A DNA stretch of 21,917 nt from Paramoeba atlantica (GCA_977017575.1 CDRNVI010000191.1:1-21917), one strand, 5' to 3'; positions 1 to 21,917 are shown, counted from the stretch's first letter. Program-made: numbers and translations. The notes: generated from the letters alone by a model not told the origin.

Positions 1-690
1 CTAAACCCTAAACCCTTAAACCTAAACCCTAAACCCTAAACCTAAACCCTAAACCCTAAACCCTAAACCCTAAAACCCTAAACCCTAAACCCTAAACCCT
101 AAACCCTAAACCCTAAACCCTAAACCCTAAACCCTAAACCCTAAACCCTAAACCCTAAACCCTAAACCCTAAACCCTAAACCCTAAACCCTAAACCCTAA
201 ACCCTAAACCCTAAACCCTAAACCCTAAACCCTAAACCCTAAACCCTAAACCCTAAACCCTAAACCCTAAACCCTAAACCCTAAACCCTAAACCCTAAAC
301 CCTAAACCCTAAACCCTAAACCCTAAACCCTAAACCCTAAACCCTAAACCCTAAACCCTAAACCCTAAACCCTAAACCCTAAACCCTAAACCCTAAACCC
401 TAAACCCTAAACCCTAAACCCTAAACCCTAAACCCTAAACCCTAAACCCTAAACCCTAAACCCTAAACCCTAAACCCTAAACCCTAAACCCTAAACCCTA
501 AACCCTAAACCCTAAACCCTAAACCCTAAACCCTAAACCCTAAACCCTAAACCCTAAACCCTAAACCCTAAACCCTAAACCCTAAACCCTAAACCCTAAA
601 CCCTAAACCCTAAACCCTAAACCCTAAACCCTAAACCCTAAACCCTAAACCCTAAACCCTAAACCCTAAACCCTAAACCCTAAACCCTAA
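1..690. repeat. Telomeric repeat array (CCCTAAA)n, i.e. TTTAGGG on the minus strand; left chromosome end
   Basis: About 98 near-perfect CCCTAAA units with the C-rich strand 5' at the window start; a few variant units in the first 80 nt; array stops sharply at 690. Confidence 0.98.
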
Positions 691-913
691 CCACTCCCTG
701 GTTTTAGAAGGCAAACAATCAAACGCAGACCCCTTAGTGAGAACTAAAGTTGGTAAAGAAACTCCAATGCATCCCATGCTGAAGAGATCTTTGGATCTAA
801 CTCTTAATTTATCTTCCCTCCCCCCCCCCTTTCTTCCCCCCTCTTTTCCATCCTAGAGATGGTTTTTTAACTCTAATAAATGGCACCTGGTGTTTGAACC
901 TTAAAAAAAAAAA
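691..913 (+). mobile_element. Putative 3'-end fragment of a polyadenylated retroelement or transcript, capped directly by the telomere
   Basis: Open frame 692-856 ending in TAG with no start codon (cut by the telomere); AATAAA at 875-880; TT then A11 at 903-913. AATAAATGGCA is identical to the signal at 5106 in the neighbouring LINE. Confidence 0.5.
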
Positions 914-930
914 TTCAAAATTTCAAAAAA

Positions 931-1520
931 TTGAGAACCCTTCGGAAGATGGCTGGAAGTTGTCGGCCTCTTTTCATTTTGATTCAAGAATCTCACTCTG
1001 ATTTTGAATGCGACCTCGATCTCATCAGGAACCAATTGAAGAAGTATATCTGGTTGAGAGACAACTCCTTTGGGAAGAGGAGGGGTCTGCTCATTGGAGT
1101 TAGGCAGATGGAGGGGGTGAAAGAGATCTCTCCCTGTTTCTTTGACCAGACCATGAGTGGATTATTTGGTGTCCATGTGACTATTGGATCGACGAACTAT
1201 TCTGTCCTGAATATATACTATCACCTTGACCTCAAAGTAGCCACCATCTCGCAGGAGGCCGCTCGTTTTTTCGGCCAGAACTCTAGGAGCATAAATATCT
1301 TTGGGGGTGATTTCAATTGGGATGTGAAGGAAAAACAGATGGGGGAAATTGAAAAGTGTTGTGCTTCTCTCTGTATGTCATGCTTAAAATGGGATGAACC
1401 CACCCATTATAAAGGGAGGTGTATCGACCATATCTTCTTCTTGTCCAAGGCTCCATTAAAACGTTTGTTTATCAATGCCATCCTGTCCGGCTTTAAAGAT
1501 CATGCACTGCTGATTGGAGG
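931..1520 (+). other. Apurinic-like endonuclease (APE/EEP) domain, N-terminal strand missing
   Basis: Motifs ILIQESH, LNIY, GGDFN, CIDHIF and FKDH (canonical SDH). The expected N-terminal xNxxG motif is absent. Confidence 0.88.
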
Positions 1521-2217
1521 ATCCTCGTTTAAGGAATGGGAGATTCGGGCGAATAAGAAATCCATCCCTGAGTATCTGATTAATGACCATGGGTTCATCA
1601 ACACTCTTATTGAGAGGATGGGTACCTTCTCCGAGGGTGATGATCCCAACGAGTTTTTGACCAGATTTAAGACCACAGCTTGGGAATTAGTTCCCTACTG
1701 GAGAGAAAGAAACACTAAGGCAGCATTGTTTAGAGAACTGTGGAAGATCCACTCTCTTGTAAGATCCCTTTGCAATTCTCGCATTCTTAGGAAATCTACT
1801 GTCCAGAGGCTATACTCTTCCCTTGAAATGGGTTTGTTGGACCAGGCCTCCCTTGGTTGGAAAGGTTCGAAGGAAGGGAAGTCGTGGAGGAGAGGAATAA
1901 TCCCCAGAATGATTTCTGCAGCACTCAAGAAGATTGAATGCATTGAAGGACAGTTGGGGATCTTTATTGACAGTCACCCTGCGAGGCCTAAAGCGAGATC
2001 ATCCCCAAGGGTTAAAGGAATTGTTGTGGATGGGGTCATTTCCAGAGATAATGGTGTGGTCCAGAAAGCAATTAAAGAATTTTGGGGGAATCTATTGGGC
2101 TCAGTGAGGCCATACAACAAGGACTCCCTCCAGAAGCTGATTGAGAACCATAAACCTCGGTTTCCTAAGGTTGATTACCATGTTGTTGATGGGGCCAAGG
2201 TTGATAAACTGCTGTGA

Positions 2218-3120
2218 CGGTGCAATAATTCAAGCGCTGGCCCAGATGGTATCCCCTTTGCTCTCTACAGAGTGACAAGCGAACAGCTGTGTGATATATG
2301 GTGTGAACTTATCCAGAGAGCTGGGGAATCAATGGATTTCTCTGAGTCGTTTGGGGAGAGTCAGCTTGTATTACTACCTAAGATTGAGAATATTCCTCGT
2401 CCTGACCAATTTCGACCAATAAGTATTACCAATTCTGATTATCGGATTGTGATGAGATATTGGGCCAAATGGCTGATGGAGAGTGCCAGAGAGGTGATTT
2501 CCCCGGAACAAAATGCTATATTTGCTGGAAGGTCCATTGATAATGCAGTGGAATCGATACATGATGGGTTTATGGAAGCGGTAGCAGAGGGCAAAGATGT
2601 GACCATCCTCCAAACTGATTTCTGTAAGGCTTATGACTATGTTAACCGTGAAGCTCTTATGGAGTTGCTGATTGGGTTGAATGCTCCACCCCAAGCCCTT
2701 GAAGTTGTATCTAAAGTTCTGCGAGAGTCAGATACATGGCTCCCAACTGTAGGATCGAATGATAAGACACAGAAGGAAGCCATCAAGAGCTGGACTGGTG
2801 TGCGACAAGGCTGCCCCATTTCACCTCTTCTGTTCATTATTCTTTTTGATGTTTTATTGGTTAGTTTGAACAATGGGGGTGACCTTGAGAAGCTTACTGG
2901 GTTCATGGATGATTTAGCCCTTCTCCTTCACAGGGTTCAGTCCATAAATTCCTTGACCTCAACCTTCCAAGAATATGAACAAGGAACCGGGGCCAAACTC
3001 AACTACAACAAATGCTTTGTATTGTCAACTGAAAAATTCGCTCCTGTGGGCCCTTGGGTTGAAATGCCTTCAGCTAATTATTTGGGAGAGGAGACTGTGT
3101 ACTTGGGAGTTACAATTTCT
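2218..3120 (+). other. Non-LTR reverse transcriptase domain
   Basis: Motifs AGPDGIP, FRPISITNSDYRI, PEQNAIF-GRSI-DN, TDFCKAYDYV, GVRQGCPISPLLF, catalytic FMDD at 2902-2913, GAKLNYNKC and YLGVTI. Confidence 0.96.
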
Positions 3121-3756
3121 TGAAAAATGAACCCAACTAAAGATTGAGAAGGGGTGATCAAGAAAATGCAGAAGGTTGGAACAGCAATTAAGCAAAGGAA
3201 AGGCAGCTTCAAGGAGAGAGTCCGGATGATCAATACTTATCTTATTCCTTGTATGGGTTATTTGGCAAGATTCAAGCTTATCTCGAAAGCTGTCTCCTCG
3301 AAGATGTGGAAGGCCATTCGTTCAGCCTTAGGTGCATATGCAAATCTAAAGTCCTGCGTAATGACCTCTCTTCGTCCCCCCTTCTTTGAAAAACCCCAAG
3401 TTAGACACCCTATTCTGTTTAACTGGGCTCTGCTGATATCAAGGAAACCTCTCCAAGATCATTATAGGAATCCATTGTCCATTGGGGCCATGAGGATTGA
3501 TGCTTTGGAAGCTAGTGGTGCTATCTCAGAACAAGTGAGGATGGGCTCCAAAACCAAGAGATCTTTCTCTCTCCTCTCTCGGAACATTTCTGTGAGAGTG
3601 GAGAATTTCTATGTGGGGGATGGGTGCTTGAAATGTGTGATCTATAATTTGTCTCTTCCACAAAGACCCCAGATTAAGCGGAACCTTTTGAAATTCTTTT
3701 TGAGGGGTCTTCCAACTGTGGATAAGATTGCCCATTTTATATCTGTGAGTCCACTT

Positions 3757-3810
3757 TGTTGGCTATGTAGGAAAGCCAAAGAGTCAAGGGTGCACCTCCT
3801 TGAAGAATGT
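3757..3810 (+). other. zf-RVT-type zinc finger
   Basis: CWLCRKAKESRVHLLEEC (C-x2-C-x8-H-x4-C) downstream of the RT, as in L1-type ORF2. Confidence 0.8.
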
Positions 3811-4125
3811 CTGAAAGCTAAGGCAATTTTGAAAACTATTGGGAGGAAATGCTTTATTTTAAAGATTCCTGGGTGGGAGAGTGCCAACTTTGTGTGTGGA
3901 TTTACGAACCAGTATCTAAAGAAGGCTGAAGCATCTGCAGTGAGTGCAGCCCTATTGAGCTTGTGGATCACTGTATGTGCAGAAGGATCAAAGTCCCCAA
4001 GCTTTGCTGTTAAAATTTTTGATGAAATTGCTAAGACAAACAAGATGATCCCCAAACAAACTATAAGAAAGGCTCCCCCCAAAGGTAAAAGAGAAGTGAA
4101 ACAACCAAAGTTCAAGTACCCTGCC

Positions 4126-4500
4126 TTGCAAGTGTTTTATGATGGCTCTGGGCATGTAGACCCTCACATCAGGGGAGCTGGGTATGTGATTATTAAGGAA
4201 GGTTTGGAGGTTGGAGGTGGATTTGAAACAATTCCACTAGGCTCAAATAACTTGGGTGAGTTTTCAGGATGCTTAGCTGGTCTACAACAAGTTATTAGCT
4301 TTGGGCAACACGTAGAGATGGTGGGAGATTGTAAAATTCTGACTGAGGCAGCGCCTAAGACGAAACCAATTGATAACTTTAAGCTCAATGAGATCCTATC
4401 TGAGATCAGAAATATTGCTGAGAGTAAATTTGCCAAAGTGGAGTACACTCATGTGTATCGCGAATTCAACAAGAGGTCAGATGCGATTACAACAGCAGCA
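4126..4500 (+). other. RNase HI domain, archaeal-like type
   Basis: VFYDGSG...GAGYVI, SNNLGEF, MVGDCKI and HVYREFNKRSD; the four catalytic acidic residues (D, E, D, D) are all present. Confidence 0.88.
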
Positions 4501-5105
4501 AGTCACTTTGAAGAGGATGGGATGGAAGCTGTGTTTGATAGGAACTGGGATCCAAGATCGAAACAACTAGCAACAACCAGTGAGGAATGGATTATTGAGA
4601 ATTCCAAGCTGTGGAAGTGGGTGATGGAACCGTTGGATTTGGATTGGAGCTTCCCTGTGAAGAAAGTTCAGTTTAAGAGAAGATTTAAGGACAAGGTGAT
4701 TACAACTAATAATGTTTACTTCCCAGTACAAGCTGCACTGGATGGGGTGATGATTTCTCCTGTGTTCATTTCAGATGATATTGTCAAGTGGTTTCCAGAA
4801 AGAGCTGCACCTGGAGAGATGTTAGAAAGTTTTGTTGAAAAAGAAAACCGGAAATGGAGAGAGGAGTATGAGCAAGCAAGGAACCATTGGTTGAAGAGTG
4901 CAATGAGACCTTCCATTGTAAGGAAGATTATTAGGCCTATTAAGGCTGTTGAGAAGAAAAGAATTTTGAAAGAGATTCGAATGAGAAATAGAAAGAAACA
5001 TTAGAGCTTTTGGCCACTAAGTTGGTGCTGAAGTGGGTTGATCCTACTTGATTATAACAATTTAATTTAAGTGTATTCTTGGGTGTCCAGATTACACTTC
5101 ATTTC

Positions 5106-8675: not shown

Positions 8676-9889
8676 TTATCTTCTTCTTCTTCTTCTTTTT
8701 TCTTTCTCTTCTTCTTCTTCTTCTTCTTCTTTTTCTTCTTCTTCTTGGGAATGAAGCAAGGCAGTCTCAAGATATTTGATTGGAAGATCATCAAGCTCAG
8801 TCATTAAACTCTCTTCAAGGACAACATAGTTTTGATGAAATAATTTTCTCTTCTCTTTCAAAGACTGAGGGACAAAAATTAATGTTTGTTCAAAGAAATG
8901 ATAAAAATTACCAACATGAAAAAGAAAAAAAAAGAAAAGGATAAAATGAAGATAATTAAAGAGAGAAAAGAAAAAAAAAAAAAAAGAAAAGAAAAAGAAA
9001 AAGAAAGAGAAACCACAGAAAGAAAAGATGCACCAATAATCACCAAACCACAAAACATAAGAATAAAAACAAAAGAGTAGTCAGAGCCCCACCCCACCAC
9101 TTCCCCAAAAACCAAACAACACTGGAAAATGAAACCAATCACCCCAAAAAAAGTGGCAGGAAAAGAAGGAAATATCATTCCAATGGCCGTCACAATGATT
9201 GTCATCAACAATGCCAAAACATTCATGAATAGCTCGCGAGTGAAACAACCAAGGAGAAGATAGATCACAAATCCAAAATTTGCTGCAACAAAGAGCCATC
9301 CAATTTGAGTTCTCAAATAGAAATTTTGCACTAAAAGGACAAACAAGATTACAATCAAGAAGAAACAAATGGCCACCATTGGAAAAGTCCAGAATATCAC
9401 ACCATCACCAAAGGCTGCCTCAAGAAGTGCGCTCACCAAATACCCACTCCCAAGATACAGATTGAAAATCATGGAGTTCACTTTGAAGCAACAGAAAACA
9501 ATACAAGCCACAAACAAATGGGGAAGACATGAAAAAATGATAACATCCCACATGGTATCATAAGAACAAATCCCCAGAGCAAAAACAAGCCCCAATGGAA
9601 CAACAAGAGAAACAAGCAGAATCCAACAGATTGGAATGAAAGGGGAGTTTTTTGGTGTCTGGTAGATCACGATCGCAAGGATAAACATTAACATAAAGAA
9701 CCACCCAAAAGTAAACCAATCATCATGTGCCGAAAGGGTGAGCAAGAAAGTCCCACAAACTAAAGGAACCAGCCCAATCCAAAAGAGAATCGATGCAGGC
9801 CGACAGGCACAAATTTGATTGTTTTCATCTTCGACAGAAGAAAGAGGCTCCTCAACAACAACACGACCACGTTCCAGATCTTGCTCCAT
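8676..9889 (-). CDS. Multipass membrane protein of about 354 aa with an E/K/R-rich C-terminal tail; exons 9889-9014 and 8864-8676
   Basis: 292 open codons with roughly 9-10 hydrophobic segments; T-rich phase-0 GT-AG intron 9013-8865; exon 2 SLKEKRK...EEEEKEKRRRRRR ending in TAA. The donor could instead be 3 nt upstream. Family not recognised. Confidence 0.75.
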
Positions 9890-11105: not shown

Positions 11106-14100
11106 TTAATTTTCTTTTTTTGCTCGAGCTGGTTTTATAGTTTGTCCCTACAACCAAGAAAACAAAAATGAGATTATATTCTTTCTTCCCACATTTAAAT
11201 AAAATATTTATTCAACAAAAAAATCAAACAACAAAAAAGAAAAAGAAAAAAAAGAGGAAAATGGACAAAAAGGATAAAAGAAGAAAAAAACCAAACCTTC
11301 AATTGAATGATCAGATCAACAATTTTGTGGTTCTTTGCAACATCAAAGACTGTCTTCCCAAACTAAAAACAAAAAAAAAAAAAAAAAAAAAGAAGTTCAA
11401 AAAAAAAAAGAAAGAACCCCACCCAAAACCAACAAAACCAACAAAACCAACAAAATCAATAAAATCAACAAAATCAACAAAATCAATTTTAAAAAAAGGG
11501 AACATTCTAAAATCAAACAACACATCAAAAAAGAAAAAAAAAAAAAAGGAAGATTAAAAAACACGGATCACACACACCTCAACTCAATCAACTCAGACAA
11601 TCAAAAGAGATATTCCCCAAAACCCAAATAACAAAAAAACACAAAATAAAAATGAAACAAAAAGGGGAAAAAAAATATATCAAAAAAAAAAAGAAAAATG
11701 AAAAAACTTTGTTTTGAAGGTTAACATTGGCATGATGTTCAATCAAAATCTTTACAATTTCTTTATAACCTTTAGAAGCAGCTTTATGAAGAGGGGTCCA
11801 CCCATCCTTGAAAAAAAAAGATTTCAAAAAAAAAAAGAATTTAAAAAAAAATAAAACACAAAACAAATATCAATCAATATCCTCCACTCCACTGGAGGGA
11901 CTGGAAAAAGAAGATCAACAAATTCAAAATGAGAATGAATAACTCAATAACCTTATTTACAAAATCAACATTGGCTCTTCCTTTTTCCAATAAAAGTTGA
12001 ACAATTCGTTTATGTCCTTCTCCAGCAGCAACATAAAGAGGAGTTATTCCATCCTTTACATTAAAAAAAAAATAAATAAAAAAATGAGAAACTGAAAAAG
12101 AAAAAGAAAAAGAAAACAATCAACAAAATAACTTGATCTGGAAGATCAACATTTGGGTTTCCTTTTTCCAATAGAATTTGAACAATTTGTTCATGTCCTT
12201 CTTCAGCAGCAATAGAAAGAGGAGTTGCTCCATACTTTACATGAATAAAAAATAATAAAAAAAATGAGAAATTGAAAAAAAAAAAAAAAGAAACAATCAA
12301 CAAAAGAACCTCAGTTGCAAGATCAACATTTGATTTTCCTTTTTCCAATAAAATCTGAATAGTTTGTTCATGCCCTTCTTGTGCAGCAAAATAAAGAGCA
12401 GTTGCTCCATTCTTTACATGAATAATAAATAGAAAAATGAGAAATTGAAAAGAAAAGAAAGAAAAAGAAAAAGAAAACAATCAACAAAAGAACCTTATCT
12501 GGAAGGTCAACATTTGCTTTTCCTTTTTCCAATAAAATTTCAACAATTTGTTCATGTCCTTCTTGAGCAGCAACATAAAGAGGAGTTGCTCCATTCTTTA
12601 CATGAATAAAAAATCGAAAAATGAGAAACTGAAAAAAAAAAAAAAAGAAGAAAACAAACAAAAAAAGAACCTTTTTTGCAAGATCAACATTTGGTTTTCC
12701 TTTTTCCAATAAAATTTGAACAATTTGTTTATGTCCTTCCCGAGCAGCAATAAAAAGGGGAGTTGCTCCAGTCTTTACATTTAAAAAAATAGAAAAATGA
12801 GAATCTGAAAAAGAAAAAGAGAAGAAAAAGAAAACAATCAACAAAAGAACCTCAGTTGCAAGATCAACATTTGGTTTTCCTTTTTTCAATAAAATTTGAA
12901 CAATTTGTTCATGTCCATTTTGAGCAGCAATAAAAAGAGGAGTGAATATTCCCTTAAAATTAAAAGAAAATATAGAAAAATGAGAAACTGAAAAAGAAAA
13001 AGAAAAAGAAACAATCAACAAAATAACCTTATCTGGAAGATCAACATTGGCTCCTTTTTCCAATAAAAGTTGAACAATTTGTTTATGTCCATCTTCAGCA
13101 GCAATAGAAAGAGGAGTTGCTCCATTCTTTACATTAAAAATATAGAAAAATGAGAAACTGAAAAAAAGAAAAAGAAAAAAGAAAACAATTAATAAAAGAA
13201 CCTTAGTTGCAAGATCAACATTTGGTTTTCCTTTTTCCAATAAAAGTTGAACAATTTGTTCATGTCCATTTTGAGCAGCAACATAAAGAGGAGTTTCTCC
13301 ATACTTTCCATTTAAAAAAATAGAAAAATGAGAAACTGAAAAAGAAAAAGAAAAAAGAAAACAATTAACAAAATAACCTTATCTGGAAGATCAACATTTG
13401 GTTTTCCTTTTTCCAATAAAATTTGAACAATTTGTTCATCTCCATTTTCAGCAGCAATAGAAAGAGGGGTTACTCCATCCTTTTGATGAAAAAAATAGAA
13501 AAATGAGAAACTGAAAAAAGAAAGAAAAAGAAAAAAGAAAAGAATCAACTAAAGAACCTCAGTTGCAAGATCAACATTTGGTTCTCCTTTTTCCAATAAA
13601 AATTGAACAATTTGTTCATCTCCTTGTTGAACAGCAATAAGAAGAGGAGTTGCTCCATCCTTTATGATAAAAAAAAAAAGAAAAAAATGAGAAACTGAAA
13701 AAAAGAAATTTCAAATATTTTGAGTTTTTTCAATTGTTTTTTTTGAGAAGAAAAAAGAGATAAAATTGTGTGTATGGTAAAAAAACTCTCAATGAGAGTA
13801 AAAAAACAAATCTAGGAAACAAGTTAAACAAGAAAAAAAATAATCTAATTTTCTTGGAATCAATCTTTCAAAGAAATAAGATTAATTTTCAAAGAAATAA
13901 TAATAATATTTTTTCAAGAAATAATATTAACTTTGTTTTGTTTGACCTTTTTCCAAACAAAAAAAAAATCCACTGACTAAAAAGTTCCCTTTTGATGCAA
14001 GAGAATTGTGTGTGTTTTTTTGAGAGAAAAAAGAGTTCAAATTGTGTGTGTGGTGAAACTCTCTCTCTCTCCCTCTCTCTCTCTCCCCCTCTCTCTTTCC

Positions 14101-14507
14101 CTCTCTCAGCCCCTCTCCCCTTCTCCCCTTTGATCTCTCCTTCTCTCTCCCCAAAAACAAAAGGAAAAAAAGAGAAAGAAAGAAGAAAATTCACAAACAT
14201 TGGATGATTTTTCTATCAACTCTTTTCTCATTTTCTCTTCTTCTTCTTCTCCTTCTCCTTCTCCTTCTTCTTCTTCTTTTCTCCTCTTCTCTTCTTCTTC
14301 ATGTCTCAATTTCACCACTCCAAGTTCTTCATTTTCCAGTTTCGGTCTTTTAATCACTCCGTTTCTTTGTTTTTCTCTCCCTTTCTCTTCTTCTTCTTCT
14401 TTTCTCTTCCTCTTCCCCTCTTCCTCTCTTCTCTCAGTCCTCTCTCTATCCCCAACCACCACCACCACCACCTCCTCCTTCATCATATTTCTCTCATTCA
14501 AATTCAT
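11106..14507 (-). CDS. Ankyrin-repeat gene A: E/K/R-rich exon, 11 single-repeat exons, capping exon and tail exon
   Basis: Exons 14507-14199, 13659-13558, 13479-13378, 13303-13202, 13126-13028, 12952-12851, 12772-12671, 12595-12494, 12411-12310, 12234-12133, 12053-11952, 11806-11708, 11362-11297 (FGKTVFDVAKNHKIVDLIIQLK) and 11147-11106 (GQTIKPARAKKEN, TAA). All introns are GT-AG and phase 0. The start exon is less certain. Confidence 0.85.
11425..11480. repeat. Short 9-bp tandem repeat CAAAA(C/T)CAA in the intron before the capping exon; copy number differs between paralogs
   Basis: About six units here; fewer in gene B (near 15275-15310) and gene C (near 18385-18430). Confidence 0.7.
11708..13659 (-). 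repeat. Tandem exon+intron array with a period of about 174-184 bp (11 ankyrin exons)
   Basis: Each unit is a 99/102-nt exon of pattern xGxTPLxxAAxxGHxQIVxxLLEKGxxNVDLxxx plus a 75-82-nt T-rich intron; the last intron is 145 nt. Confidence 0.93.
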
Positions 14508-14977
14508 CAAACAAAAAATAAAACAAAAAAAAATAAAAAACAAAACAAAAAAAAACAAGAGACACACACCCTCAAAACAAAAAAACAAAAAAAGAGAAAA
14601 AGAAGGGTTTTGGGGGGTGGGTCTTTTTGTTAATTTTTGAAAGGGTTTTCAGATTTTGATGAGAAATTCTCAGGTTTCATAAAAATGGAGGTTGAATTCT
14701 CACCACACTACCCTAAATACAGAGAAATCCTGGAGAGAGTCTTTTGTGGTTGCATGGATATCACCAAAAGTTTTTTTCCCTTGACTTTTTTCTTTCTCTT
14801 TCTCAAGGAAGTAAGAGAGGTTGAATTTACCCACGATGGGTTCTCCCAATCAAATTCTTTATCACCAACATCATCTCAAGTCAAAAGTCAATTTTTAAAT
14901 TTTGGTTTAATAAAAAGGGAGGTTTTTGTGTGAGGAAACATAACTTTGTTATTATTCTCTTTTCAAACTTTTAAATT

Positions 14978-17846
14978 TTAATTTTCTTTTTTTGCTCGAG
15001 CTGGTTTTATAGTTTGCCCCTACAACCAAGAAAATAAAAATGAGATCACATTCTTTCTTCCCACACTCCAACAAAAGAATAAAACAAAAAAAGAAAAGAA
15101 AAAAAAGTAAAAAGTAAAAAGAAAAAAAAAGAAGAGAGAATAAAAAAAAACCAAACCTTCAATTGAATGATGAGATCAACAATTTGCTGGTTCTTTGCAA
15201 CATCAAACACTGTCTTCCCAAACTAAAAACAAAAAAAGAAAAGAAGTTCAAAAAAAAAAAAAAAGAACCCCACCCAAAACCAACAAAACCAACAAAATCA
15301 ATAAAATCAATTTTAAAAAAAAGGGAACATTCTAAAATCAAACAACACATCAAAAAAGAAAAAAAAAAAAAGAGGAAGATTAAAAAACACACATCACAGA
15401 TCACACACACACACCTCAACTCAATCAACTCAGACAATCAAAAGAGATATTCTCCAAAACCCAAATAACAAAAAAACACAAAATAAAAATGAAACAAAAA
15501 GGAGAAAAAAAATATATCAAAAAAAAAAAAGAAAAATGAAAAAACTTGGTTTTGAAGATTAACATTGGCATGATGTTCAATCAAAATCTTTACAATTTGT
15601 TCAAAACCTTCCTCAGCAGCTCTATGAAGAGGGGTAAACCCAAACTTAACAAAAAAGATTTCAAAAAAAAAGAGTTTTAAAAAAAAATAAAACACAAAAC
15701 AAGTATCACTCAATATCCACCCACCCTCCCTCCACTTCCACTGGAGGGATTGGAAAAACAAAATCAATAAATTCAAAATGATAACAAATAACACAATAAC
15801 CTTATTTGCAAGATCAACATTTGCTTTTCCTTTTTCCAATAAAAGTTGAACAATTTGTTTATGTCCTTTACAAGCAGCAATAAAAAGAGGAGTTCTTCCA
15901 CCCTTTAAATAAAAAAAAAGAAAAATGAAAAACCGAAAAAAAAAAAAAGAAAAAGAAAAAGAAACAATCAACAAAAGAACCTGATCTGGAAGATCAACAC
16001 TTGGTTTTTCTTTTTCCAATAAAAGTTGAACAATTTGTTCATCTCCATTTTGGGCCGCCATATAAAGAGGAGTTGTTCCATCCTTTACATTCAAAAAATA
16101 GAAAAATGAGAAACTGAAAAAAAAAAAAAGAAAAAGAAGAAAACAATCAACAAAATAACCTCATTTGCAAGATCAACATTTGGATTTCCTTTTTCCAATA
16201 AAATTTGAACAATTGGTTCACGTCCACATTGAGCAGCAACAAAAAGAGGAGTTCTTCCAGTCTTTAAATTAAAAAAAAAAATAGAAAAATGAGAAACTGA
16301 AAAGAAAAAAAAAGAAAAAGAAGAAAACAATCAACAAAATAACCTTAGTTGCAAGATCAACATTTGGATTTCCTTTTTCCAATAAAATTTGAACAATTTG
16401 TTCATGTCCATTTTGAGCAGCACTATAAAGAGGAGTTACTCCATACTTTACATTAAAAAAATAGAAAAATGAGAAAATGAAAAAAAAGAAAAAGAAAAAG
16501 AAGAAAACAATCAACAAAATAAACCTTAGTTGGAAGATCAACACTTGGTTTTCCTTTTTCCAATAAAAGTTGAACAATTTGTTCATGTCCATGTTGGGCC
16601 GCCATATAAAGAGGAGTTACTCCATACTTTACATTAAAAAAATAGAAAAATGAGAAACTGAAAAAAAAAAAAAAGAAAAAGAAAAAGAAAACAATCAACA
16701 AAAGAATCTGGAAGATCAACATTTGGTTTTCCTTTTTCCAATAAAATTTGAACAATTTGTTCATGTCCATTTTCAGCCGCAATATAAAGAGGAGTTACTC
16801 CATTCTTTACATTAAAAAAATAATCAAAAATGAGAAAAAGAAAAAGAAAAAGAAAAAGAAACAATTAACAAAATAACCTTATCTGGAAGATCAACATTGG
16901 CTCCTTTTTCCAATAAAATTTGAGCAATTTGTTCATGTCCATTTTCAGCAGCAACAAAAAGAGGAGTTTTTCCATTCTTTACATTAAAAAAATAATCAAA
17001 AATGAGAAAAAGAAAAAGAAAAAGAAAAAGAAAAAGAAAAAGAAAAGAATCAACAAAATAACCTGATCTAGAAGATCAATATTTGGTTCTCCTTTTTCCA
17101 ATAAAATTTCAACAATTTGTTCATCTCCTTGTTGAACAGCAATAAGAAGAGGAGTTGCTCCATCCTTTATGATAAAAAAAAAAAGAAAAAAATGAGAAAC
17201 TGAAAAAAAGAAATTTCAAATATTTTGAGTTTTTTCAATTGTTTTTTTTAAGAAAAAAGAGATAAAATTGTGTGTATGGTAAAAAACTCTCAATGAGAGT
17301 AAAAAAACAAATCTAGGAAACAAGTTAAACAAGAAAAAAAATAATCTAATTTTCTTGGAATCAATCTTTCAAAGAAATAAGATTAATTTTCAAGAAATAA
17401 TAATAATATTTTTTCAAGAAATAATATTAAATGTGTGTGTGGTGAAACTCTCTCTCTCTCCCTCTCTCTCTCCCCCTCTCTCTTTCCCTCTCTTGGCCCC
17501 TCTCCCCTTCTCCCCTTTGATCTCTCCTTCTCTCTCCCCAAAAACAAAAGGAAAAAAAGAGAAAGAAAGAAGAAAATTCACAAACATTGGATGATTTTTC
17601 TATCAACTCTTTTCTCATTTTCTCTTCTTCTTCTTCTTCTTCTCCTTCTCCTTCTTCTTCTTCTTCTTTTCTCCTCTTCTCTTCTTCTTCATGTCTCAAT
17701 CTCACCACTTCAAGTTCTTCATTTTCCAGTTTCGGTCTTTTAATCACCCCATTTCTTTGTTTTTCTCTCCCTTTCTCTTCTTCTTCTTCTTTTCTCTTCC
17801 TCTTCCCCTCTTCCTCTCTTCTCTCAGTCCTCTCTCTCAAATTCAT
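14978..17846 (-). CDS. Ankyrin-repeat gene B: E/K/R-rich exon, 9 single-repeat exons, capping exon and tail exon
   Basis: Exons 17846-17586, 17164-17063, 16976-16878, 16804-16700 (shifted donor), 16626-16525, 16445-16344, 16261-16160, 16082-15981, 15902-15801, 15644-15546, 15222-15157 and 15019-14978 (TAA). Confidence 0.83.
15546..17164 (-). repeat. Tandem exon+intron array (9 ankyrin exons)
   Basis: Same repeat unit as gene A. Confidence 0.92.
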
Positions 17847-18095
17847 CAAACAAAAAATAAAACAAAAAAAAATAAAACAAGAGACACACCACACCCAAAA
17901 CAAAAAAATAAAAAAAAAAGTTTTCAATTTTGAGGAGAAAACCATTCTTTGTTCTTTTTTCCAAATTATTTCCCTTTTTTTGAACATCCAATATCGATTT
18001 TTTGTTTTTGTTTGTTTTTTGAAAAAGGTTCCTTTTTTATTTATTTCTCCCACCAAAAAGGCACACAAAGATTCTATTTTCAAACTTTCAAAATT

Positions 18096-20601
18096 TTAAT
18101 TTTCTTTTTTTGCTCGAGCTGGTTTTATAGTTTGTCCCTACAACCAAGAAAACAAAAATGAGATTATATTCTTTTTTCCCACACTCAACAAAAAAATCAA
18201 ACAACAAAAAAGAAAAGAAAAGAAAAAAAAGAAAATGGACAAAAAGGATGAAAGAAAAAAAAAACTAAACCTTCAATTGAATGATGAGATCAACAATTTT
18301 CTGGTTCTTTGCAACATCAAAGACTGTCTTCCCAAACTAAAAACAAAAAAGAAAAGAAGTTCAAAAAAAAAAAGAACCCCACCCAAAACCAACAAAACCA
18401 ACAAAACCAATAAAATCAACAAAATCAATAAAAAAAAAAGAGGAAGATTAAAAAACACAGATCACACACACCTCAACTCAATCAACTCAGACAATCAAAA
18501 GAGATATTCTCCAAAACCCAAATAACAAAAAAACACAAAATAAAAATGAAACAAAAAGGAGAAAAAAAAAAAAGAAAAATGAAAAAACTTGGTTTTGAAG
18601 ATTAACATTGGTACAATGTTCAATCAAAATCTTTACAATTTGTTCAAAACCTTCCTCAGCAGCTCTATGAAGAGGGGTAAACCCAAACTTAACAAAAAAG
18701 ATTTCAAAAAAAAAAAGAGTTTTAAAAAAAAATAAAACACAAAACAAATATCACTCAATATCCACCCACCCTCCCTCCACTTCCACTGGAGGGATTGGAA
18801 AAACAAAATCAATAAATTCAAAATGATAACAAATAACACAATAACCTTATTTGCAAGATCAACATTTGCTTTTCCTTTTTCCAATAAAAGTTGAACAATT
18901 TGTTTATGTCCTTTACAAGCAGCAATAAAAAGAGGAGTTCTTCCATCCTTTAAATAAAAAAAAAGAAAAATGAAAAACTGAAAAAAAAAAAAAAAAAAAA
19001 GAAAATGAAAAAGAAACAATCAACAAAAGAACCTTATCTGGAATATCACCATTTGGTTTTCCTTTTTCCAATAAAAGTTGAACAATTTGTTCATACCCTC
19101 TTTCAGCAGCAATATAAAGAGGAGTTATTCCATACTTTACATTAAAAAAAAAATAGAAAAATGAGAAACCGAAAAAAAAAAAAAAGAAAACAATTAACAA
19201 AAGAACCTGATCTGGAAGATCAACATTTGGGTTTCCTTTTTCCAATAAAATTTGAACAATTTGTTCATATCCTTCTTCAGTAGCAATAGAAAGAGGGGTT
19301 ACTCCATCCTTTTGATGAAAAAAAATAGAAAAATGAGAAACTAAAAAAAAAAAAAAAAAGAAAAAGAAACAATTAATAAAAGAACCTGATCTGGAAGATC
19401 AACATTTGGTTTTCCTTTTTCCAATAAAATTTCAACAATTTGTTTCTGTCCATTTGCAGCAGCAATAAGAAGAGGAGTTACTCCATACTTTACATTAAAA
19501 AAAAATAGAAAAATGAGAAAATGAAAAAAAAAAAGAAAACAATCAACAAAAGAACCTTCTCTGCAAGATCAACATTTGGGTTTCCTTTTTCCAATAAAAT
19601 TTGAACAATTTGTTTATGTCCTTGTTCAGCAGCAATAGAAAGAGGAGTTGCTCCATTCTTTACATTAAAAAAAAAATAGAAAAATGAGAAACTGAAAAAG
19701 AAAAAGAAAAAGAAACAATTAATAAAAGAACCTGATCTGGAAGATCAACATTTGGTTTTCCTTTTTCCAATAAAATTTCAACAATTTGTTTATGTCCATT
19801 TGCAGCAGCAATAAGAAGAGGAGTTACTCCATCCTTTACATTAAAAAAAAATAGAAAAATGAGAAAATGAAAAAAAAAAAAAAAGAAAACAATCAACAAA
19901 AAAGAACCAGATTTGGAAGATCAACATTTGGTTTTCCTTTTTCCAATAAAATTTCAACAATTTGTTTATGTCCATTTGCAGCAGCAATATAAAGAGGAGT
20001 TCTTCCATACTTTACATTAAAAAAAAAAATAGAAAAATGAGAAAATGAAAAAAAAAAAAAAAAAAGAAAAAGAAAAAGAAACAAACAACAAAAGAACCTG
20101 ATCTGGAAGATCAACATTTGGTTCTCCTTTTTCCAATAAAAATTGAACAATTTGTTCATATCCATTTTGAGCAGCAACAAAAAGAGGAGAGATTCCAGCC
20201 TTTTGATTTAAAAAATAGAATAATTTAATAATAGAATAAAATAATAAAAAAAGGAAAAAAAGAGAAAAGAAGAAGAAGAAAATTCACAAACCTGGAATGA
20301 TTTTTCTATCAACTCTTTTCTCATTTTCTCTTCTTCTTCTTCTTCTTCTTCTTCTTCTTCTTCTTCTTCTTCTTCTTCTTCTTCTTCTTCTTTTCTCTTC
20401 TTCTCTTCTTCTTCATTCCTTGATCTCACTCCAAGTTCTTCATTTTCCGGTTTCGGTCTTTGTTTTTCTCTCCCTTTCTCTTCTTCTTCTTTTCTCTTCC
20501 TCTCTTCCTCTTCTCACAGTCCCCTCTCTTTCAATCAGATGAACAGGGGGAAAGAGATCAACTTCCTCACCACCACACCCACATCCACACCAATTCCCCA
20601 T
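18096..20601 (-). CDS. Ankyrin-repeat gene C: E-rich exon (5' end uncertain), 9 single-repeat exons, capping exon and tail exon
   Basis: The E-rich exon ends IEKSFQ|gtttgt near 20292. Repeat exons 20199-20098, 20009-19908, 19833-19732, 19657-19556, 19487-19386, 19308-19207, 19134-19033, 18947-18846 and 18687-18589; cap 18336-18271; tail 18137-18096 (TAA). The candidate ATG at 20601 is out of frame with the E-rich part. Confidence 0.75.
18589..20199 (-). repeat. Tandem exon+intron array (9 ankyrin exons)
   Basis: Same repeat unit as genes A and B. Confidence 0.92.
20329..20390. repeat. (TTC)n/(GAA)n microsatellite encoding poly-Glu in gene C
   Basis: About 20 perfect triplets in frame with MRKELIEK. 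Confidence 0.85.
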
Positions 20602-20805
20602 CTTTTTTTTGTGAACACCCACACTCACTTTTTGTTTGTTTCTGCCTCTGAACTCTCCACTCTCTCTCTCTTCTAAACCCCCTTCTCCCCTCAGAAACCT
20701 TTTTCAAAGGAAAATAAAAAAAATAAAAACAAACAAAAACCAAAAAATTGCTGAAATAAAAAACCACTGAAAAACCCCCCAAGAGTTAGAGTCCCAAAAA
20801 AGTCT

Positions 20806-21047
20806 TTATGTGCTTGGAAAGTACTCAAAGTGGGAACACCACTTGAGTGTTTATTCTCCAGAAGAAAACACCAGATGAAACAACCAAAAAACCAAAACAC
20901 AAACAAAGCTCGAAGATCAGAGCAGATAAGGACGAACCAACAGAAAAAGGGGAAGAAACTCAGAGCGAGAAGGAAAGGAAGCATGGGAAGAGCCAAAGAC
21001 TCAAAAGGAAGGGGGGCACTGATGCTCAAGGGCTCGAGAGCCACACC
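20806..21047. repeat. 242-bp direct repeat, terminal copy (B2)
   Basis: One mismatch to 21261-21502 (GAGAGCC versus GGGAGCC). Confidence 0.95.
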
Positions 21048-21260
21048 CAGGGTGGGTGGGAGGGATAAGGACCAAAAAAGAAGAAGAGAGGAGGGAAAAA
21101 GCGAAAGAAAAGAGCGCAAAGAGCACAAGATGCAGAGAGCAAGAAGCTGAAGAAGCGTGAAGAAGAAAAGGGCGAAACGCGTCCCAGTGCATCTTCAGAG
21201 AATGCGATGATCAAATGAATCTGAGCACTTTCCGCACATAAAAAGCACTTTCGTGCCTGA

Positions 21261-21502
21261 TTATGTGCTTGGAAAGTACTCAAAGTGGGAACACCACTTG
21301 AGTGTTTATTCTCCAGAAGAAAACACCAGATGAAACAACCAAAAAACCAAAACACAAACAAAGCTCGAAGATCAGAGCAGATAAGGACGAACCAACAGAA
21401 AAAGGGGAAGAAACTCAGAGCGAGAAGGAAAGGAAGCATGGGAAGAGCCAAAGACTCAAAAGGAAGGGGGGCACTGATGCTCAAGGGCTCGGGAGCCACA
21501 CC
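21261..21502. repeat. 242-bp direct repeat, internal copy (B1), overlapping the YR stop codon
   Basis: 241 of 242 positions identical to 20806-21047. Confidence 0.95.
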
Positions 21503-21915
21503 ATCTTCGGCCTGAGGCTCCGAAGTCTTTCGGATAGGGTGGAAATGCAGAGTCTGTGCTTGAGTCTCAACTTCTCAGAGAAGGTAATCCCCTCCCTGTC
21601 ACGGATGTAAATCTTCATAGAGTTGCACTCTTTCCAAGTTCCAAGAGCTTGTAGAATCTCATTGGGGTAGTTTAGGTCGTTCATAAACTGAGAACCAGTG
21701 TGTCTCAAGTCGTGCCAAGTGTGGTTCTTAACACTGGAGGATGCACAGATCTTTGAAAGATGTAGATTTAGCAGTCGATCGGACCAGCCCTCAGCTACTA
21801 GGGAATTGGGTTCACACTCAAGACGGTGCATTCTGTTGATGATGACTCTTTCTGCAATAGGGTGAAGAATAGACCATATTGAATCTTGATGTCCTTTGAC
21901 TTGTTCAAGGTAGAT
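21481..21915 (-). CDS. Tyrosine recombinase, C-terminal part (5'-partial)
   Basis: The frame is open to the window edge. TWHDLRH (H-x-x-R at 21714-21703), LQALGTW (H/W position) and SMKIYIR (catalytic Tyr at 21609-21607) match the pattern in DIRS/Ngaro/Crypton recombinases. Confidence 0.85.
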   Translation of the reverse strand: MYLEQVKGHQDSIWSILHPIAERVIINRMHRLECEPNSLVAEGWSDRLLNLHLSKICASSSVKNHTWHDLRHTGSQFMNDLNYPNEILQALGTWKECNSMKIYIRDREGITFSEKLRLKHRLCISTLSERLRSLRPKMVWLPSP

Positions 21916-21917
21916 GC

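What the first reader, a model, noticed from the sequence alone, without database searches (positions are those of the whole stretch)
11106..20601. Subtelomeric ankyrin array with one repeat per symmetric exon: a possible combinatorial repertoire
Seen: three tandem paralogs with 11, 9 and 9 full repeats. Every repeat is one exon of 99, 102 or 105 nt between phase-0 GT-AG introns, bracketed by a charged head and constant cap and tail exons. No repeat exon contains a stop or frameshift. Any exon can be skipped, duplicated or swapped without losing frame. Established: exon-per-repeat shuffling has been proposed as an immune-like diversifier for Ectocarpus LRR-ROCO and NB-ARC-TPR genes, and subtelomeres host variable gene families in many protists. 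Inference: an ankyrin-based diversifying recognition system using splicing and/or recombination.
Basis: partly seen in the sequence, partly recalled or inferred. Interest (0 to 1): 0.85.

Follow-up and report, generated by a model that had tools for sequence, protein, structure and literature searches.

The report
Hypervariable ankyrin genes, one repeat per exon
Three intact neighbouring genes near a chromosome end encode ankyrin-repeat proteins with one repeat per small exon; they belong to a large family whose target-binding residues change about five times faster than neutral DNA, which points to a fast-evolving recognition repertoire, but whether splicing mixes the exons could not be tested.

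Summary
On the minus strand lie three head-to-tail ankyrin genes with 11, 9 and 9 repeats. Each repeat is one AG..GT, phase-0 exon of 99, 102 or 105 nt, and none has a stop or frameshift. N-cap, C-cap and tail exons are constant. The cluster lies 10-20 kb from a (CCCTAAA)n telomere. One correction: gene 3's "charged head" has no upstream ATG, so the head may be 5'UTR.

- **Family.** At least 65 contigs of the same assembly carry relatives. Eleven fetched loci have the same build, with about 9 to 40 repeats.
- **ROCO link.** Two loci join at least 15 and about 40 such exons to an intronless Roc-COR-kinase gene.
- **Selection.** Nonsynonymous change at the six DARPin-randomised positions is 5.1 times the synonymous rate (95% bootstrap 4.1-6.6). 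It is 4.2 times intron divergence. Framework positions give 0.5.
- **Gene conversion.** Genes 2 and 3 share a tract of about 600 bp at 97-100% identity.

Best reading: a germline-diversifying ankyrin binder family, an ankyrin counterpart of brown-algal LRR-ROCO and fungal NLR repeats. None of the 11 other loci held telomere repeats, so subtelomeric enrichment is not supported. The scan had already noted this family on another piece of this genome (s1-369893) and on this stretch (s1-370111).

The parts
1..690 (.). Telomere tract (CCCTAAA)n, the chromosome end that makes the cluster subtelomeric
   Evidence: TRF finds period 7, 98.6 copies and 98% matches.
11106..14231 (-). Gene 1: ANK-only gene with 11 repeats, 418 aa counted from the shared Met at 14231. 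A possible longer start lies at 14507.
14199..14507 (-). Gene 1 head: an E/K/R-rich open frame that ends in the N-cap helix MRKELIEKSSN, with its donor after 14199
   Evidence: One search shows in-frame Mets at 14507, 14486, 14483 and 14231. Whether the part upstream of 14231 is coding is uncertain.
11952..13659 (-). Gene 1 repeat exons R1-R10: 13659-13558, 13479-13378, 13303-13202, 13126-13028 (99 nt), 12952-12851, 12772-12671, 12595-12494, 12411-12310, 12234-12133, 12053-11952
   Evidence: All are AG|exon|GT in phase 0 with no stops, and the introns between them are 74-82 nt.
11708..11806 (-). Gene 1 C-cap repeat exon R11 (99 nt, ..ILIEHHANVNLQNK)
   Evidence: It is 58-65% identical in nucleotides to the internal repeats and 83-86% identical to the C-caps of genes 2 and 3.
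11297..11362 (-). Gene 1 tail exon (66 nt, a half repeat FGKTVFDVAKNHKIVDLIIQLK)
11106..11147 (-). Gene 1 last exon (GQTIKPARAKKEN, then stop)
14978..17618 (-). Gene 2: ANK-only gene with 9 repeats, 351 aa from the shared Met at 17618. A possible longer start lies at 17846.
15801..17164 (-). Gene 2 repeat exons R1-R8: 17164-17063, 16976-16878 (99 nt), 16804-16700 (105 nt, atypical GTTGAT donor), 16626-16525, 16445-16344, 16261-16160, 16082-15981, 15902-15801
15546..15644 (-). Gene 2 C-cap repeat exon R9 (99 nt)
   Evidence: It is 97% identical to gene 3 R9.
14978..15222 (-). Gene 2 tail exon (15222-15157) and last exon (15019-14978)
18096..20324 (-). Gene 3: ANK-only gene with 9 repeats, 351 aa from Met 20324, the only in-frame Met of its head
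   Evidence: The head frame opens only at 20513 after a stop. It contains a (GAA)n microsatellite at 20329-20414.
18846..20199 (-). Gene 3 repeat exons R1-R8: 20199-20098, 20009-19908, 19833-19732, 19657-19556, 19487-19386, 19308-19207, 19134-19033, 18947-18846
18589..18687 (-). Gene 3 C-cap repeat exon R9 (99 nt)
18096..18336 (-). Gene 3 tail exon (18336-18271) and last exon (18137-18096)
15324..15922 (-). Tract 97-100% identical to 18420-18967 of gene 3 (R8, its intron, R9 and part of the next intron), set inside paralogues that are otherwise 79-93% identical; read as recent gene conversion
   Evidence: Windowed global alignment of gene 2 against gene 3.

Best explanation
The stretch holds three intact, tandem members of a large and fast-evolving family of soluble ankyrin-repeat binder proteins.

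Each repeat with its short T-rich intron forms a unit of about 177 bp, and this unit was multiplied by tandem duplication. One repeat per symmetric phase-0 exon is therefore a by-product of how the array grew.

The family diversifies in the germline in three ways:
- Units are gained, lost and reshuffled by unequal crossing-over.
- Tracts are copied between paralogues by gene conversion.
- Selection strongly favours amino-acid change at the six to eight residues that line the ankyrin binding groove, while the framework, the splice sites and the caps are conserved.

The proteins consist of an N-cap helix, 9-11 repeats, a C-cap and a short basic tail. They have no signal peptide, no membrane segment and no enzymatic domain. 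They most likely act as intracellular recognition or adaptor modules for variable ligands. The same cassettes form the sensor arm of Roc-COR-kinase (ROCO) genes elsewhere in the genome.

What is shown: the anatomy, the family size, the selection pattern, the conversion tract and the ROCO fusions. What is inferred: the recognition or immune-like role, constitutive splicing and expression.
For: Anatomy:
- 29 of 29 repeat exons are open, have lengths divisible by three and are bounded by AG..GT.
- Intron lengths are not constrained to multiples of three, and intron GC is 0.15-0.22 against 0.34 for the CDS.
- TRF finds periods of 176-181 bp that span exon plus intron, at 83-85% matches.
- Pfam Ank matches with E = 8e-38.

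Family:
- Read-through ORFs with 50-77% identity lie on at least 65 contigs of different lengths in one assembly.
- Eleven fetched loci show the same exon build. Loci L001-L004 and L006 also hold the same C-cap exon, and most of these a tail exon as well.

Selection (64 independent nearest-neighbour exon pairs):
- pS is 0.046 and intron mismatch is 0.056.
- pN at the six DARPin-randomised positions is 0.233, so pN/pS is 5.1 (bootstrap 4.1-6.6).
- Framework pN/pS is 0.50 (0.36-0.69).
- The window alone gives the same picture (5.65), as do ANK-only loci and ROCO arrays taken separately (per site).
- Random pairs across the family differ at 6.8% of fourfold sites and 7.4% of intron columns, but at 75% of the six positions.

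Shuffling and conversion:
- Internal repeats have their best matches at other positions or in other genes, for example g2R5 with g1R3 at 95% and g3R3 with g3R5 at 98%.
- A tract 97-100% identical sits inside gene 2 and gene 3, which are otherwise 79-93% identical.

ROCO link:
- In L005 the ANK exons splice in frame into a single-exon ORF of 1837 aa with Roc, COR-A, B-box and kinase domains.
- L007 has at least 37 intact ANK exons upstream of a paralogous Roc-COR that is 94% identical in protein.

Precedents: Ectocarpus LRR/TPR exon-per-repeat families (PMC3341825, PMC11378527) and fungal NLR ANK repeats (PMC4986451).
Against: - No transcript-derived protein of the family was found in the protein collection. 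One small run labelled 'RNA?' holds only 7-9% of the words, and these could be words shared with paralogues.
- The window genes have no signalling domain, so a receptor role is argued by analogy.
- The pN/pS counts are pairwise Nei-Gojobori counts in a recombining family. No likelihood or recombination-aware test was run.
- Synonymous and intron sites may be under some constraint from codon bias and splice signals. That would inflate the ratio, though hardly by a factor of five.
- The organism and its way of life are unknown.
Confidence: 0.6

Rival explanations
1. One reading: the symmetric exons are used combinatorially within one organism. Exon skipping, choice among exons or somatic recombination would let each gene yield many binders, giving an individual-level repertoire.
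For: Every internal exon is phase 0-0 with nearly identical splice sites, so any skip keeps both the frame and the repeat register. Gene 2 repeat 3 has only a weak atypical donor and is a natural candidate for skipping. Brown-algal LRR-ROCO genes with one repeat per exon are reported to give up to nine transcripts with different LRR sets (PMC11378527).
Against: No RNA data could be obtained. Introns of 68-88 nt are usually removed one by one by intron definition, which favours retention over skipping (general knowledge). No docking or selector-type conserved intron structure stood out, and Rfam gave nothing. The diversity seen is fully accounted for by germline differences between units and paralogues.
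Confidence: 0.1
2. An ordinary structural or adaptor ankyrin family. The variable positions are merely unconstrained surface residues, and the near identity of the rest reflects recent duplication or concerted evolution, without selection for diversity.
For: The variable positions are those that vary in ankyrin repeats generally. Tandem duplication alone explains the exon build. Gene conversion is active.
Against: Relaxed constraint gives omega of at most 1. Here omega is 5.1 (4.1-6.6) against synonymous sites and 4.2 against introns of the same pairs, in every subset. Gene conversion would homogenise the variable codons together with their neighbours. Instead, 75% of the variable positions differ where neutral sites differ by 7%.
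Confidence: 0.12
3. Exported effectors. The organism would be a parasite, symbiont or predator that delivers variable ankyrin proteins into another cell to bind host or prey proteins, as many intracellular bacteria do.
For: The family is large, fast-evolving and shaped by diversifying selection. This copy lies in a TE-rich subtelomeric setting. Ankyrin effectors are common in host-associated microbes (mentioned in PMC4986451).
Against: The predicted N-termini show no signal peptide or membrane segment (by eye only, no predictor was run). The same cassettes are the N-terminal arm of cytoplasmic ROCO kinases. The life style of the organism is unknown.
Confidence: 0.1
4. Decaying repeats: a subtelomeric minisatellite derived from an ankyrin gene, not functional genes.
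For: The cluster is AT-rich, tandemly repeated, next to a telomere and to mobile elements. Gene 3 lacks the upstream ATG.
Against: All 29 repeat exons, the caps and the tails are open, with intact AG/GT borders, in all three genes. Framework codons are under purifying selection, with pN/pS 0.5 and an upper bound of 0.69. Indels are confined to the introns.
Confidence: 0.03

Closest known systems
[quoted passage not shown] 2012, PMC3341825; Teng et al. 2024, PMC11378527)
   Same: Both have one repeat per exon of constant length, symmetric phase, gene clusters with changing repeat number and exon shuffling. Both show positive selection on the ligand-binding face and a link to Roc-COR, seen here in paralogues L005 and L007.
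   Different: The repeat here is ankyrin (99-105 nt, phase 0), not LRR (72 nt, reported as phase 2) or TPR. The three window genes have no Roc-COR or NB-ARC. The ROCO paralogues carry a kinase. Alternative splicing is reported there and untested here. The organism is a different, unidentified lineage with TTTAGGG telomeres.
Fungal NLR repeat domains with high internal conservation (ANK, TPR, WD; Dyrka et al. 2014, PMC4986451)
   Same: Both have nearly identical tandem repeats with a few hypervariable positions on the concave ankyrin face. Both show positive diversifying selection, repeat-number variation, and concerted evolution or unequal crossing-over.
   Different: The fungal arrays are attached to NACHT or NB-ARC domains and are not described as one repeat per exon. 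Here there is an intron after every repeat and no NOD domain. Amino-acid identity between window repeats is 0.68 on average (0.84 outside the variable positions), which is below the paper's 85% criterion.
Designed ankyrin repeat proteins (DARPins; Binz et al., from my own knowledge; cited in PMC1553488's reference list)
   Same: A constant framework and caps carry variation at the same six positions per repeat (DARPin 2, 3, 5, 13, 14, 33, which correspond to exon positions 34, 1, 3, 11, 12, 32). N- and C-terminal capping repeats are present.
   Different: These are natural 34-residue units with one extra loop residue. Positions 7 and 8 (DARPin 9 and 10) are also variable. The comparison is a functional analogy only.
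Metazoan ankyrin genes ANK1-3, in which most of the 24 repeats are single 99-nt exons (my recollection of Gallagher et al. 1997; not checked here)
   Same: One 33-residue repeat per symmetric exon, so the exon build by itself is not new.
   Different: Those repeats are old, diverged and positionally conserved across species. Here the units are about 93% identical at neutral sites and are under diversifying selection.
ROCO proteins with N-terminal ankyrin repeats (LRRK2, Dictyostelium Roco; reviewed in PMC4104024, which I did not read in detail)
   Same: The ANK - Roc - COR - kinase order is seen in paralogues L005 and L007.
   Different: The window genes lack the ROCO core. LRR was not detected between ANK and Roc by Pfam in L005. 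There are about 40 ANK repeats, far more than in LRRK2.

Membership tests
Ankyrin-repeat proteins (Pfam PF00023 / PF12796) | Tandem repeats of about 33 residues matching the Ank profile above the curated cut-off | tested here: met
   PF00023 scores 126.8 bits (cut-off 21.1), E = 8e-38, in 4 stretches of window:12368-13240:-. PF12796 gives E = 3.8e-30. ORFs of genes 2 and 3 also match.
Exon-per-repeat shuffling receptor families (Ectocarpus type) | Each repeat encoded by one exon of constant length, a multiple of three, with symmetric phase | tested here: met
   29 of 29 window exons are 99, 102 or 105 nt in phase 0. 175 such exons were found in the window plus 8 loci. The borders are predicted, not RNA-verified.
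Exon-per-repeat shuffling receptor families (Ectocarpus type) | Diversifying selection on the ligand-binding positions of the repeat exons | tested here: met
   pN/pS is 5.1 (4.1-6.6) at the six groove positions and 0.5 at the framework. This is pairwise counting, not a likelihood test.
Exon-per-repeat shuffling receptor families (Ectocarpus type) | Exon shuffling and rapid birth and death: repeat number and order differ between clustered paralogues | tested here: met
   Repeat numbers are 11, 9 and 9 in the window and about 9 to 40 elsewhere. The best matches of internal repeats are non-collinear.
Exon-per-repeat shuffling receptor families (Ectocarpus type) | Repeat array joined to a signalling core (Roc-COR or NB-ARC) | tested here: not met
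   The three window genes end in a C-cap plus a 35-residue tail. Only paralogues on other contigs (L005, L007) carry Roc-COR-kinase.
Exon-per-repeat shuffling receptor families (Ectocarpus type) | Alternative transcripts with different repeat-exon sets | not testable with these tools
There are no transcript-derived proteins.
Fungal-type NLRs with highly conserved repeats | Central NACHT or NB-ARC NOD domain | tested here: not met
   There is no such domain in the window genes or in the neighbouring ORFs of the fetched loci.
Fungal-type NLRs with highly conserved repeats | Internal repeat identity above 85% over at least 100 residues | tested here: not met
   Mean amino-acid identity between window repeats is 0.68, and 0.84 outside the variable positions. 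Nucleotide identity is about 85%.
Subtelomeric variant gene families | Family members concentrated next to telomeres | tested here: inconclusive
   This cluster is 10-20 kb from a telomere. None of 11 other loci holds telomere repeats, and seven of them are whole or nearly whole contigs of 6-22 kb. The contigs are too short to measure distance to chromosome ends.
ROCO proteins | Roc GTPase followed by a COR domain in the same protein | tested here: not met
   The pair is absent from the window genes. It is present in paralogues L005 (Roc 39.7 bits, COR-A 38.6 bits, Pkinase 114.9 bits) and L007.

The most novel reading that the evidence does not exclude
The cassettes form an ankyrin-based, individual-level repertoire. 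Regulated exon skipping or mitotic recombination among about 177-bp units would generate many binders per cell line. These would feed into the ANK-ROCO kinases as an adaptive-like immune or prey-recognition system in a unicellular eukaryote.
Probability: 0.07. Interest if true: 0.9.

Novelty: new variant of a known kind. Interest (0 to 1): 0.6.

Why it matters
Repeat-based recognition repertoires that diversify quickly are known with LRRs (jawless-fish VLRs, plant and brown-algal receptors) and with WD, TPR and ANK repeats in fungal NLRs. This family would add an ankyrin version that combines two known designs. One is the exon-per-repeat build of brown-algal ROCO genes. The other is the "constant framework, few hypervariable groove residues" logic that protein engineers chose for DARPins. 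It occurs in an unrelated eukaryote and includes ROCO kinases with about 40 such exons. It gives a concrete set of genes on which three questions can be tested: whether protists use ROCO-linked repeat arrays for non-self recognition, whether symmetric repeat exons are mixed by splicing, and which natural ligands drive the selection. It also carries a practical warning. Many of the short introns are stop-free and in frame, so prokaryote-style gene callers turn these arrays into false read-through proteins.

Tried and rejected
- **Read laying.** I worked beside them (queries started at 11270 or lay elsewhere).
- **Transcript evidence through proteins.** Two searches with read-through ORFs of 290 and 139 aa found only ORFs called on genomic contigs of one ENA assembly. 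None came from a transcriptome.
- **Spliced-junction pattern.** A pattern that matches only intron-less copies gave 0 hits in the window (the control) and 0 in JGI metagenome contigs. This is uninformative.
- **RIP-like or adenine-directed hypermutation as the diversifier.** Rejected. Transitions to transversions are 190:224 in exons, and the variable codons change at the first and second bases in all directions.
- **Organism identification.** A neighbouring FAD monooxygenase gave only unnamed transcriptome hits at about 42% identity. The Atlas lookup gave generic family rows whose commonest taxa were fungal, which says nothing about this organism. The organism stays unidentified.
- **Known RNA families.** Rfam found none in 11270-21917.

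Full report
**Setting.** The window starts with 98.6 copies of CCCTAAA (1-690), so it begins at a chromosome end of an organism with TTTAGGG telomeres.
- Next comes a LINE-like element (931-5004, + strand) with RVT_1, an RNase-H-type RVT_3 and a weak zf-RVT match.
- After it lie AT-rich DNA and a 336-aa multi-pass membrane ORF with no Pfam match (8879-9889, minus strand).
- The stretch in question, 11106-20601, follows.
- Beyond it, a fragment resembling a tyrosine recombinase lies at 21481-21831 (weak match, below the Pfam cut-off).
- GC drops to 0.26-0.30 over the stretch.

**Check of the observation.** On the minus strand I searched for AG|open frame|GT segments that carry the ankyrin TPL..AA..G motif, then built three gene models.
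- Gene 1 has 11 repeat exons, and genes 2 and 3 have 9 each. The ninth repeat of gene 3 to be found (19308-19207) was missed at first because it reads ..IAT.. instead of ..IAA...
- All 29 exons are 99, 102 or 105 nt, in phase 0, and have no stop.
- The introns between internal repeats are 68-88 nt and start GTT. Their lengths fall in all three classes mod 3. Their GC is 0.15-0.22, against 0.34 for the coding sequence.
- Indels are therefore free in the introns and absent from the exons except in threes. That is the signature of real exons and removed introns.
- Pfam confirms ankyrin repeats (PF00023, E = 8e-38).
- TRF finds the period (176-181 bp, or twice that) across exon plus intron at 83-85% matches. 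The repeated unit is thus the exon together with its intron.
- Each gene ends with a distinct C-cap repeat (..IEHHANVNLQN.), a 66-nt half-repeat exon and a 42-nt last exon coding GQTIKPARAKKEN.

**Correction on the head.** The purine-rich "charged head" is in frame with an upstream ATG in genes 1 and 2. In gene 3 the frame opens only after a stop at 20513, and its single Met (20324) lies 11 codons before the donor. All three genes share that Met, which starts an N-cap-like helix, MRKELIEKS... The head may therefore be 5'UTR, or be translated in only two of the genes. All exon borders are predictions.

**RNA evidence.** None could be obtained.
- Five runs hold words of the stretch. One small run labelled "RNA?" holds 7-9% of them, which could be words shared with paralogues.
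- Protein searches found no transcript-derived member of the family.
- A pattern specific for spliced junctions found nothing in JGI metagenomes.

**The family.** The two protein searches returned read-through ORFs at 50-77% identity. Many introns are in frame and free of stops, so a prokaryote-type gene caller reads through them. These ORFs lie on at least 65 contigs of different lengths in one ENA assembly. I fetched eleven loci.
- The eight loci scanned for exons (L001-L008) show the same build: tandem 99-, 102- or 105-nt AG..GT exons, one repeat each, in arrays of about 9 to 18 repeats. L009-L011 were checked only for Ank Pfam hits and for telomere repeats.
- Five of the first six loci (all but L005) hold the same type of C-cap. 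Most of those also hold the half-repeat tail, and in L004 the same last exon is present.
- The neighbours are often mobile elements: a Ty3-type element with a chromodomain, a pogo-type DDE_1 and RVT_3.
- None of the eleven loci holds even two telomere units, although seven of them are whole or nearly whole contigs of 6-22 kb.
- The subtelomeric position of this cluster is real, but my sample does not show it to be a property of the family. The contigs are too short to settle the point.

**Link to ROCO kinases.**
- In L005 the last ANK exon is followed by a C-cap-like exon and then, in frame, by a single open exon of 1837 aa. That exon carries Roc, COR-A, a weak B-box match (below Pfam's cut-off) and a protein kinase domain.
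- L007 carries at least 37 intact ANK exons (about 40 units by spacing) directly upstream of a paralogous Roc-COR that is 94% identical in protein. The contig ends inside it.
- The same cassette family thus forms small ANK-only genes, as in this window, and also the long N-terminal arm of ROCO kinases.
- In those genes an intron follows every 102 nt for about 7 kb, and then 5.5 kb have no intron. This fits one ancestral intron having been copied along with the repeat.

**How the repeats vary.** I paired repeat exons greedily into independent nearest-neighbour pairs, using each unit once. I counted synonymous and nonsynonymous differences per codon (Nei-Gojobori) and aligned the introns of the same pairs.

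| Measure (64 pairs from the window and 8 loci) | Value |
|---|---|
| pS | 0.046 |
| Intron mismatch | 0.056 |
| pN at the six pre-specified positions | 0.233 |
| pN/pS at those positions | 5.1 (bootstrap 95% 4.1-6.6) |
| pN / intron mismatch at those positions | 4.2 |
| Framework pN/pS | 0.50 (0.36-0.69) |

- The six pre-specified positions correspond to the randomised DARPin positions 2, 3, 5, 13, 14 and 33, which are exon positions 34, 1, 3, 11, 12 and 32. The mapping rests on my own knowledge of the DARPin design.
- The window alone gives 5.65 (3.4-16.6), ANK-only loci 4.9, the ROCO arrays 6.7, and close pairs (at least 90% identical) 7.2.
- Random pairs across the whole family differ at only 6.8% of fourfold third positions and 7.4% of aligned intron columns, but at 75% of the six positions.
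- Positions 7 and 8, which follow TPL, are also hypervariable.
- Relaxed constraint cannot push omega above 1. Gene conversion would erase the variable codons together with their neighbours. The pattern therefore needs selection that favours or preserves diversity in the binding groove.
- Transitions do not dominate (190:224), so a RIP-like process is not the source.
- Caveats: these are counting methods in a recombining family, and codon bias and splice signals may constrain the "neutral" sites somewhat.

**Turnover at the DNA level.**
- Between the three genes, the first repeat of genes 1 and 2 (92% identical), the penultimate repeat and the C-cap correspond by position. The internal repeats do not.
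- Their best matches lie at other positions or in other genes: g2R5 with g1R3 at 95%, g2R3 with g1R2 at 92%, g3R6 with g1R2 at 94%, and g3R3 with g3R5 at 98%.
- Genes 2 and 3 are 79-93% identical over most of their length and 82-90% in the tail. They are 97-100% identical from repeat 8 into the intron after repeat 9 (15922-15324 against 18967-18420). I read this as a recent gene-conversion tract.
- Gene 2 repeat 3 lacks the usual donor context and has only an atypical in-frame GTTGAT donor, which makes it 105 nt.

**Interpretation.** The best-supported reading is a germline-diversifying binder family.
- A unit of about 177 bp, exon plus intron, was amplified in tandem.
- Arrays gain, lose and exchange units by unequal crossing-over and gene conversion.
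- Selection drives change at the groove residues while keeping the framework, the caps and the splice sites.
- The products are soluble ankyrin solenoids with no signal peptide, membrane segment or enzymatic domain (by eye). They are most likely intracellular recognition or adaptor modules.
- Their kinship with the sensor arm of ROCO kinases makes an immune-like or non-self-recognition role plausible, but that role is inferred.
The precedent in brown algae (PMC11378527) keeps it alive. The short introns argue for ordinary intron-by-intron splicing.

**Comparison with what is known.**
In its LRR-ROCO and NB-ARC-TPR genes each repeat is one exon, exon shuffling is intense and the binding face is under positive selection (PMC3341825). 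Alternative transcripts with different LRR sets were later reported (PMC11378527).
- Fungal NLRs show ANK, TPR and WD repeats with high internal conservation, repeat-number polymorphism and positive selection on the concave face (PMC4986451).
- One ankyrin repeat per 99-nt exon also exists in animal ankyrin genes (my recollection, not checked), so the exon build alone is not new.
- What is new here is the combination: ankyrin repeats, one per exon, near-identical units with DARPin-like hypervariable positions, a family on at least 65 contigs, and ROCO kinases with about 40 such exons, all in an unidentified lineage.
- I file it as a new variant of a known kind.
- The window genes fail the membership tests that require a Roc-COR or NOD core. 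They work like the sensor part of those systems without being members.

**Earlier notes of the scan.**
- Note s1-370111 (variation at DARPin positions, on this same stretch) agrees with my counts.
- Note s1-369893 reports the same kind of family next to another chromosome end of this genome. I confirmed the family elsewhere, but not its telomere adjacency.
- Notes on spliced-leader elements (for example s1-369741) raise the possibility that these closely spaced same-strand genes are trans-spliced. Intergenic spacers are about 250-480 nt. That would bear on the head question. I did not test it.

Noticed in passing
L005:1-8958 and L007:5534-14607: These are ROCO kinase genes (Roc, COR-A, weak B-box, kinase) whose N-terminal arm is built from the same one-repeat-per-exon ankyrin cassettes. 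L005 has at least 15 exons; its contig starts inside the array. L007 has at least 37 intact exons, about 40 units by spacing. The arm is followed by about 5.5 kb without any intron. The two ROCO cores are 94% identical in protein and the DNA is 91% identical, so they are paralogues or divergent alleles.
   Followed up: partly
window 1-5004: The telomere tract (CCCTAAA)x98.6 is followed directly by a LINE-like element (ORFs 931-2217, 2272-3123, 3154-5004, + strand) with RVT_1, RVT_3 (RNase H type) and a weak zf-RVT match.
   Followed up: partly
window 21481-21831 (-): An ORF has a weak Phage_integrase match (E = 2.6e-4, below the cut-off) including an HDLRHT motif. It is probably a fragment of a tyrosine-recombinase mobile element (DIRS or Crypton type) just upstream of gene 3.
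   Followed up: partly
window 8879-9889 (-): A single 336-aa ORF is rich in hydrophobic segments and looks like a multi-pass membrane protein. It has no Pfam match and lies directly downstream of gene 1 on the same strand.
   Followed up: partly
window 12368-13240 (-) and many ENA ORFs (P0002-P0205): Many of the short T-rich introns are in frame and free of stops. Prokaryote-style gene callers therefore produce long false 'proteins' that alternate ankyrin repeats with F/L-rich intron translations. All database relatives of this family are of that kind.
   Followed up: yes
window 16700-16804 (-): Gene 2 repeat 3 lacks the family's usual donor context (..AG|GTTMTT). It has only an atypical in-frame GTTGAT donor, giving the only 105-nt exon in the window. 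It is a natural candidate for skipping or mis-splicing.
   Followed up: partly
window 13700-14200, 17230-17590 and 20200-20300 (-): The intron after the head exon is 539 nt in gene 1 and 421 nt in gene 2, and it is full of CT/GA and 21-24-nt repeats. In gene 3 it is only 92 nt. The poly-E part of the head is a (GAA)n microsatellite of different length in each gene (20329-20414 in gene 3).
   Followed up: partly
L002:1-5971: Neighbouring ORFs for a polyprenyl synthase, a UbiA prenyltransferase (split), a methyltransferase and a FAD monooxygenase lie beside two ANK genes. The set looks like a ubiquinone-type or meroterpenoid-type gene cluster, which is unusual in a eukaryote. The closest relatives of the monooxygenase are unnamed transcriptome proteins at about 42% identity.
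   Followed up: partly
L007:8-1740: A second ankyrin subfamily also has one repeat per exon, but with 99-nt exons and a different consensus (..VQMLLDKGANVD..).
   Followed up: no
L006:1984-4099: WWE-domain ORFs (E = 3e-22) lie on the same strand about 1.3 kb upstream of an ANK array with about 18 repeats. Whether they belong to one gene was not examined.
   Followed up: no
L008:4954-5541: A small Ras/Roc-type GTPase ORF (Ras, E = 2e-49) lies 3 kb upstream of an ANK-only gene near the end of a 108-kb contig.
   Followed up: no
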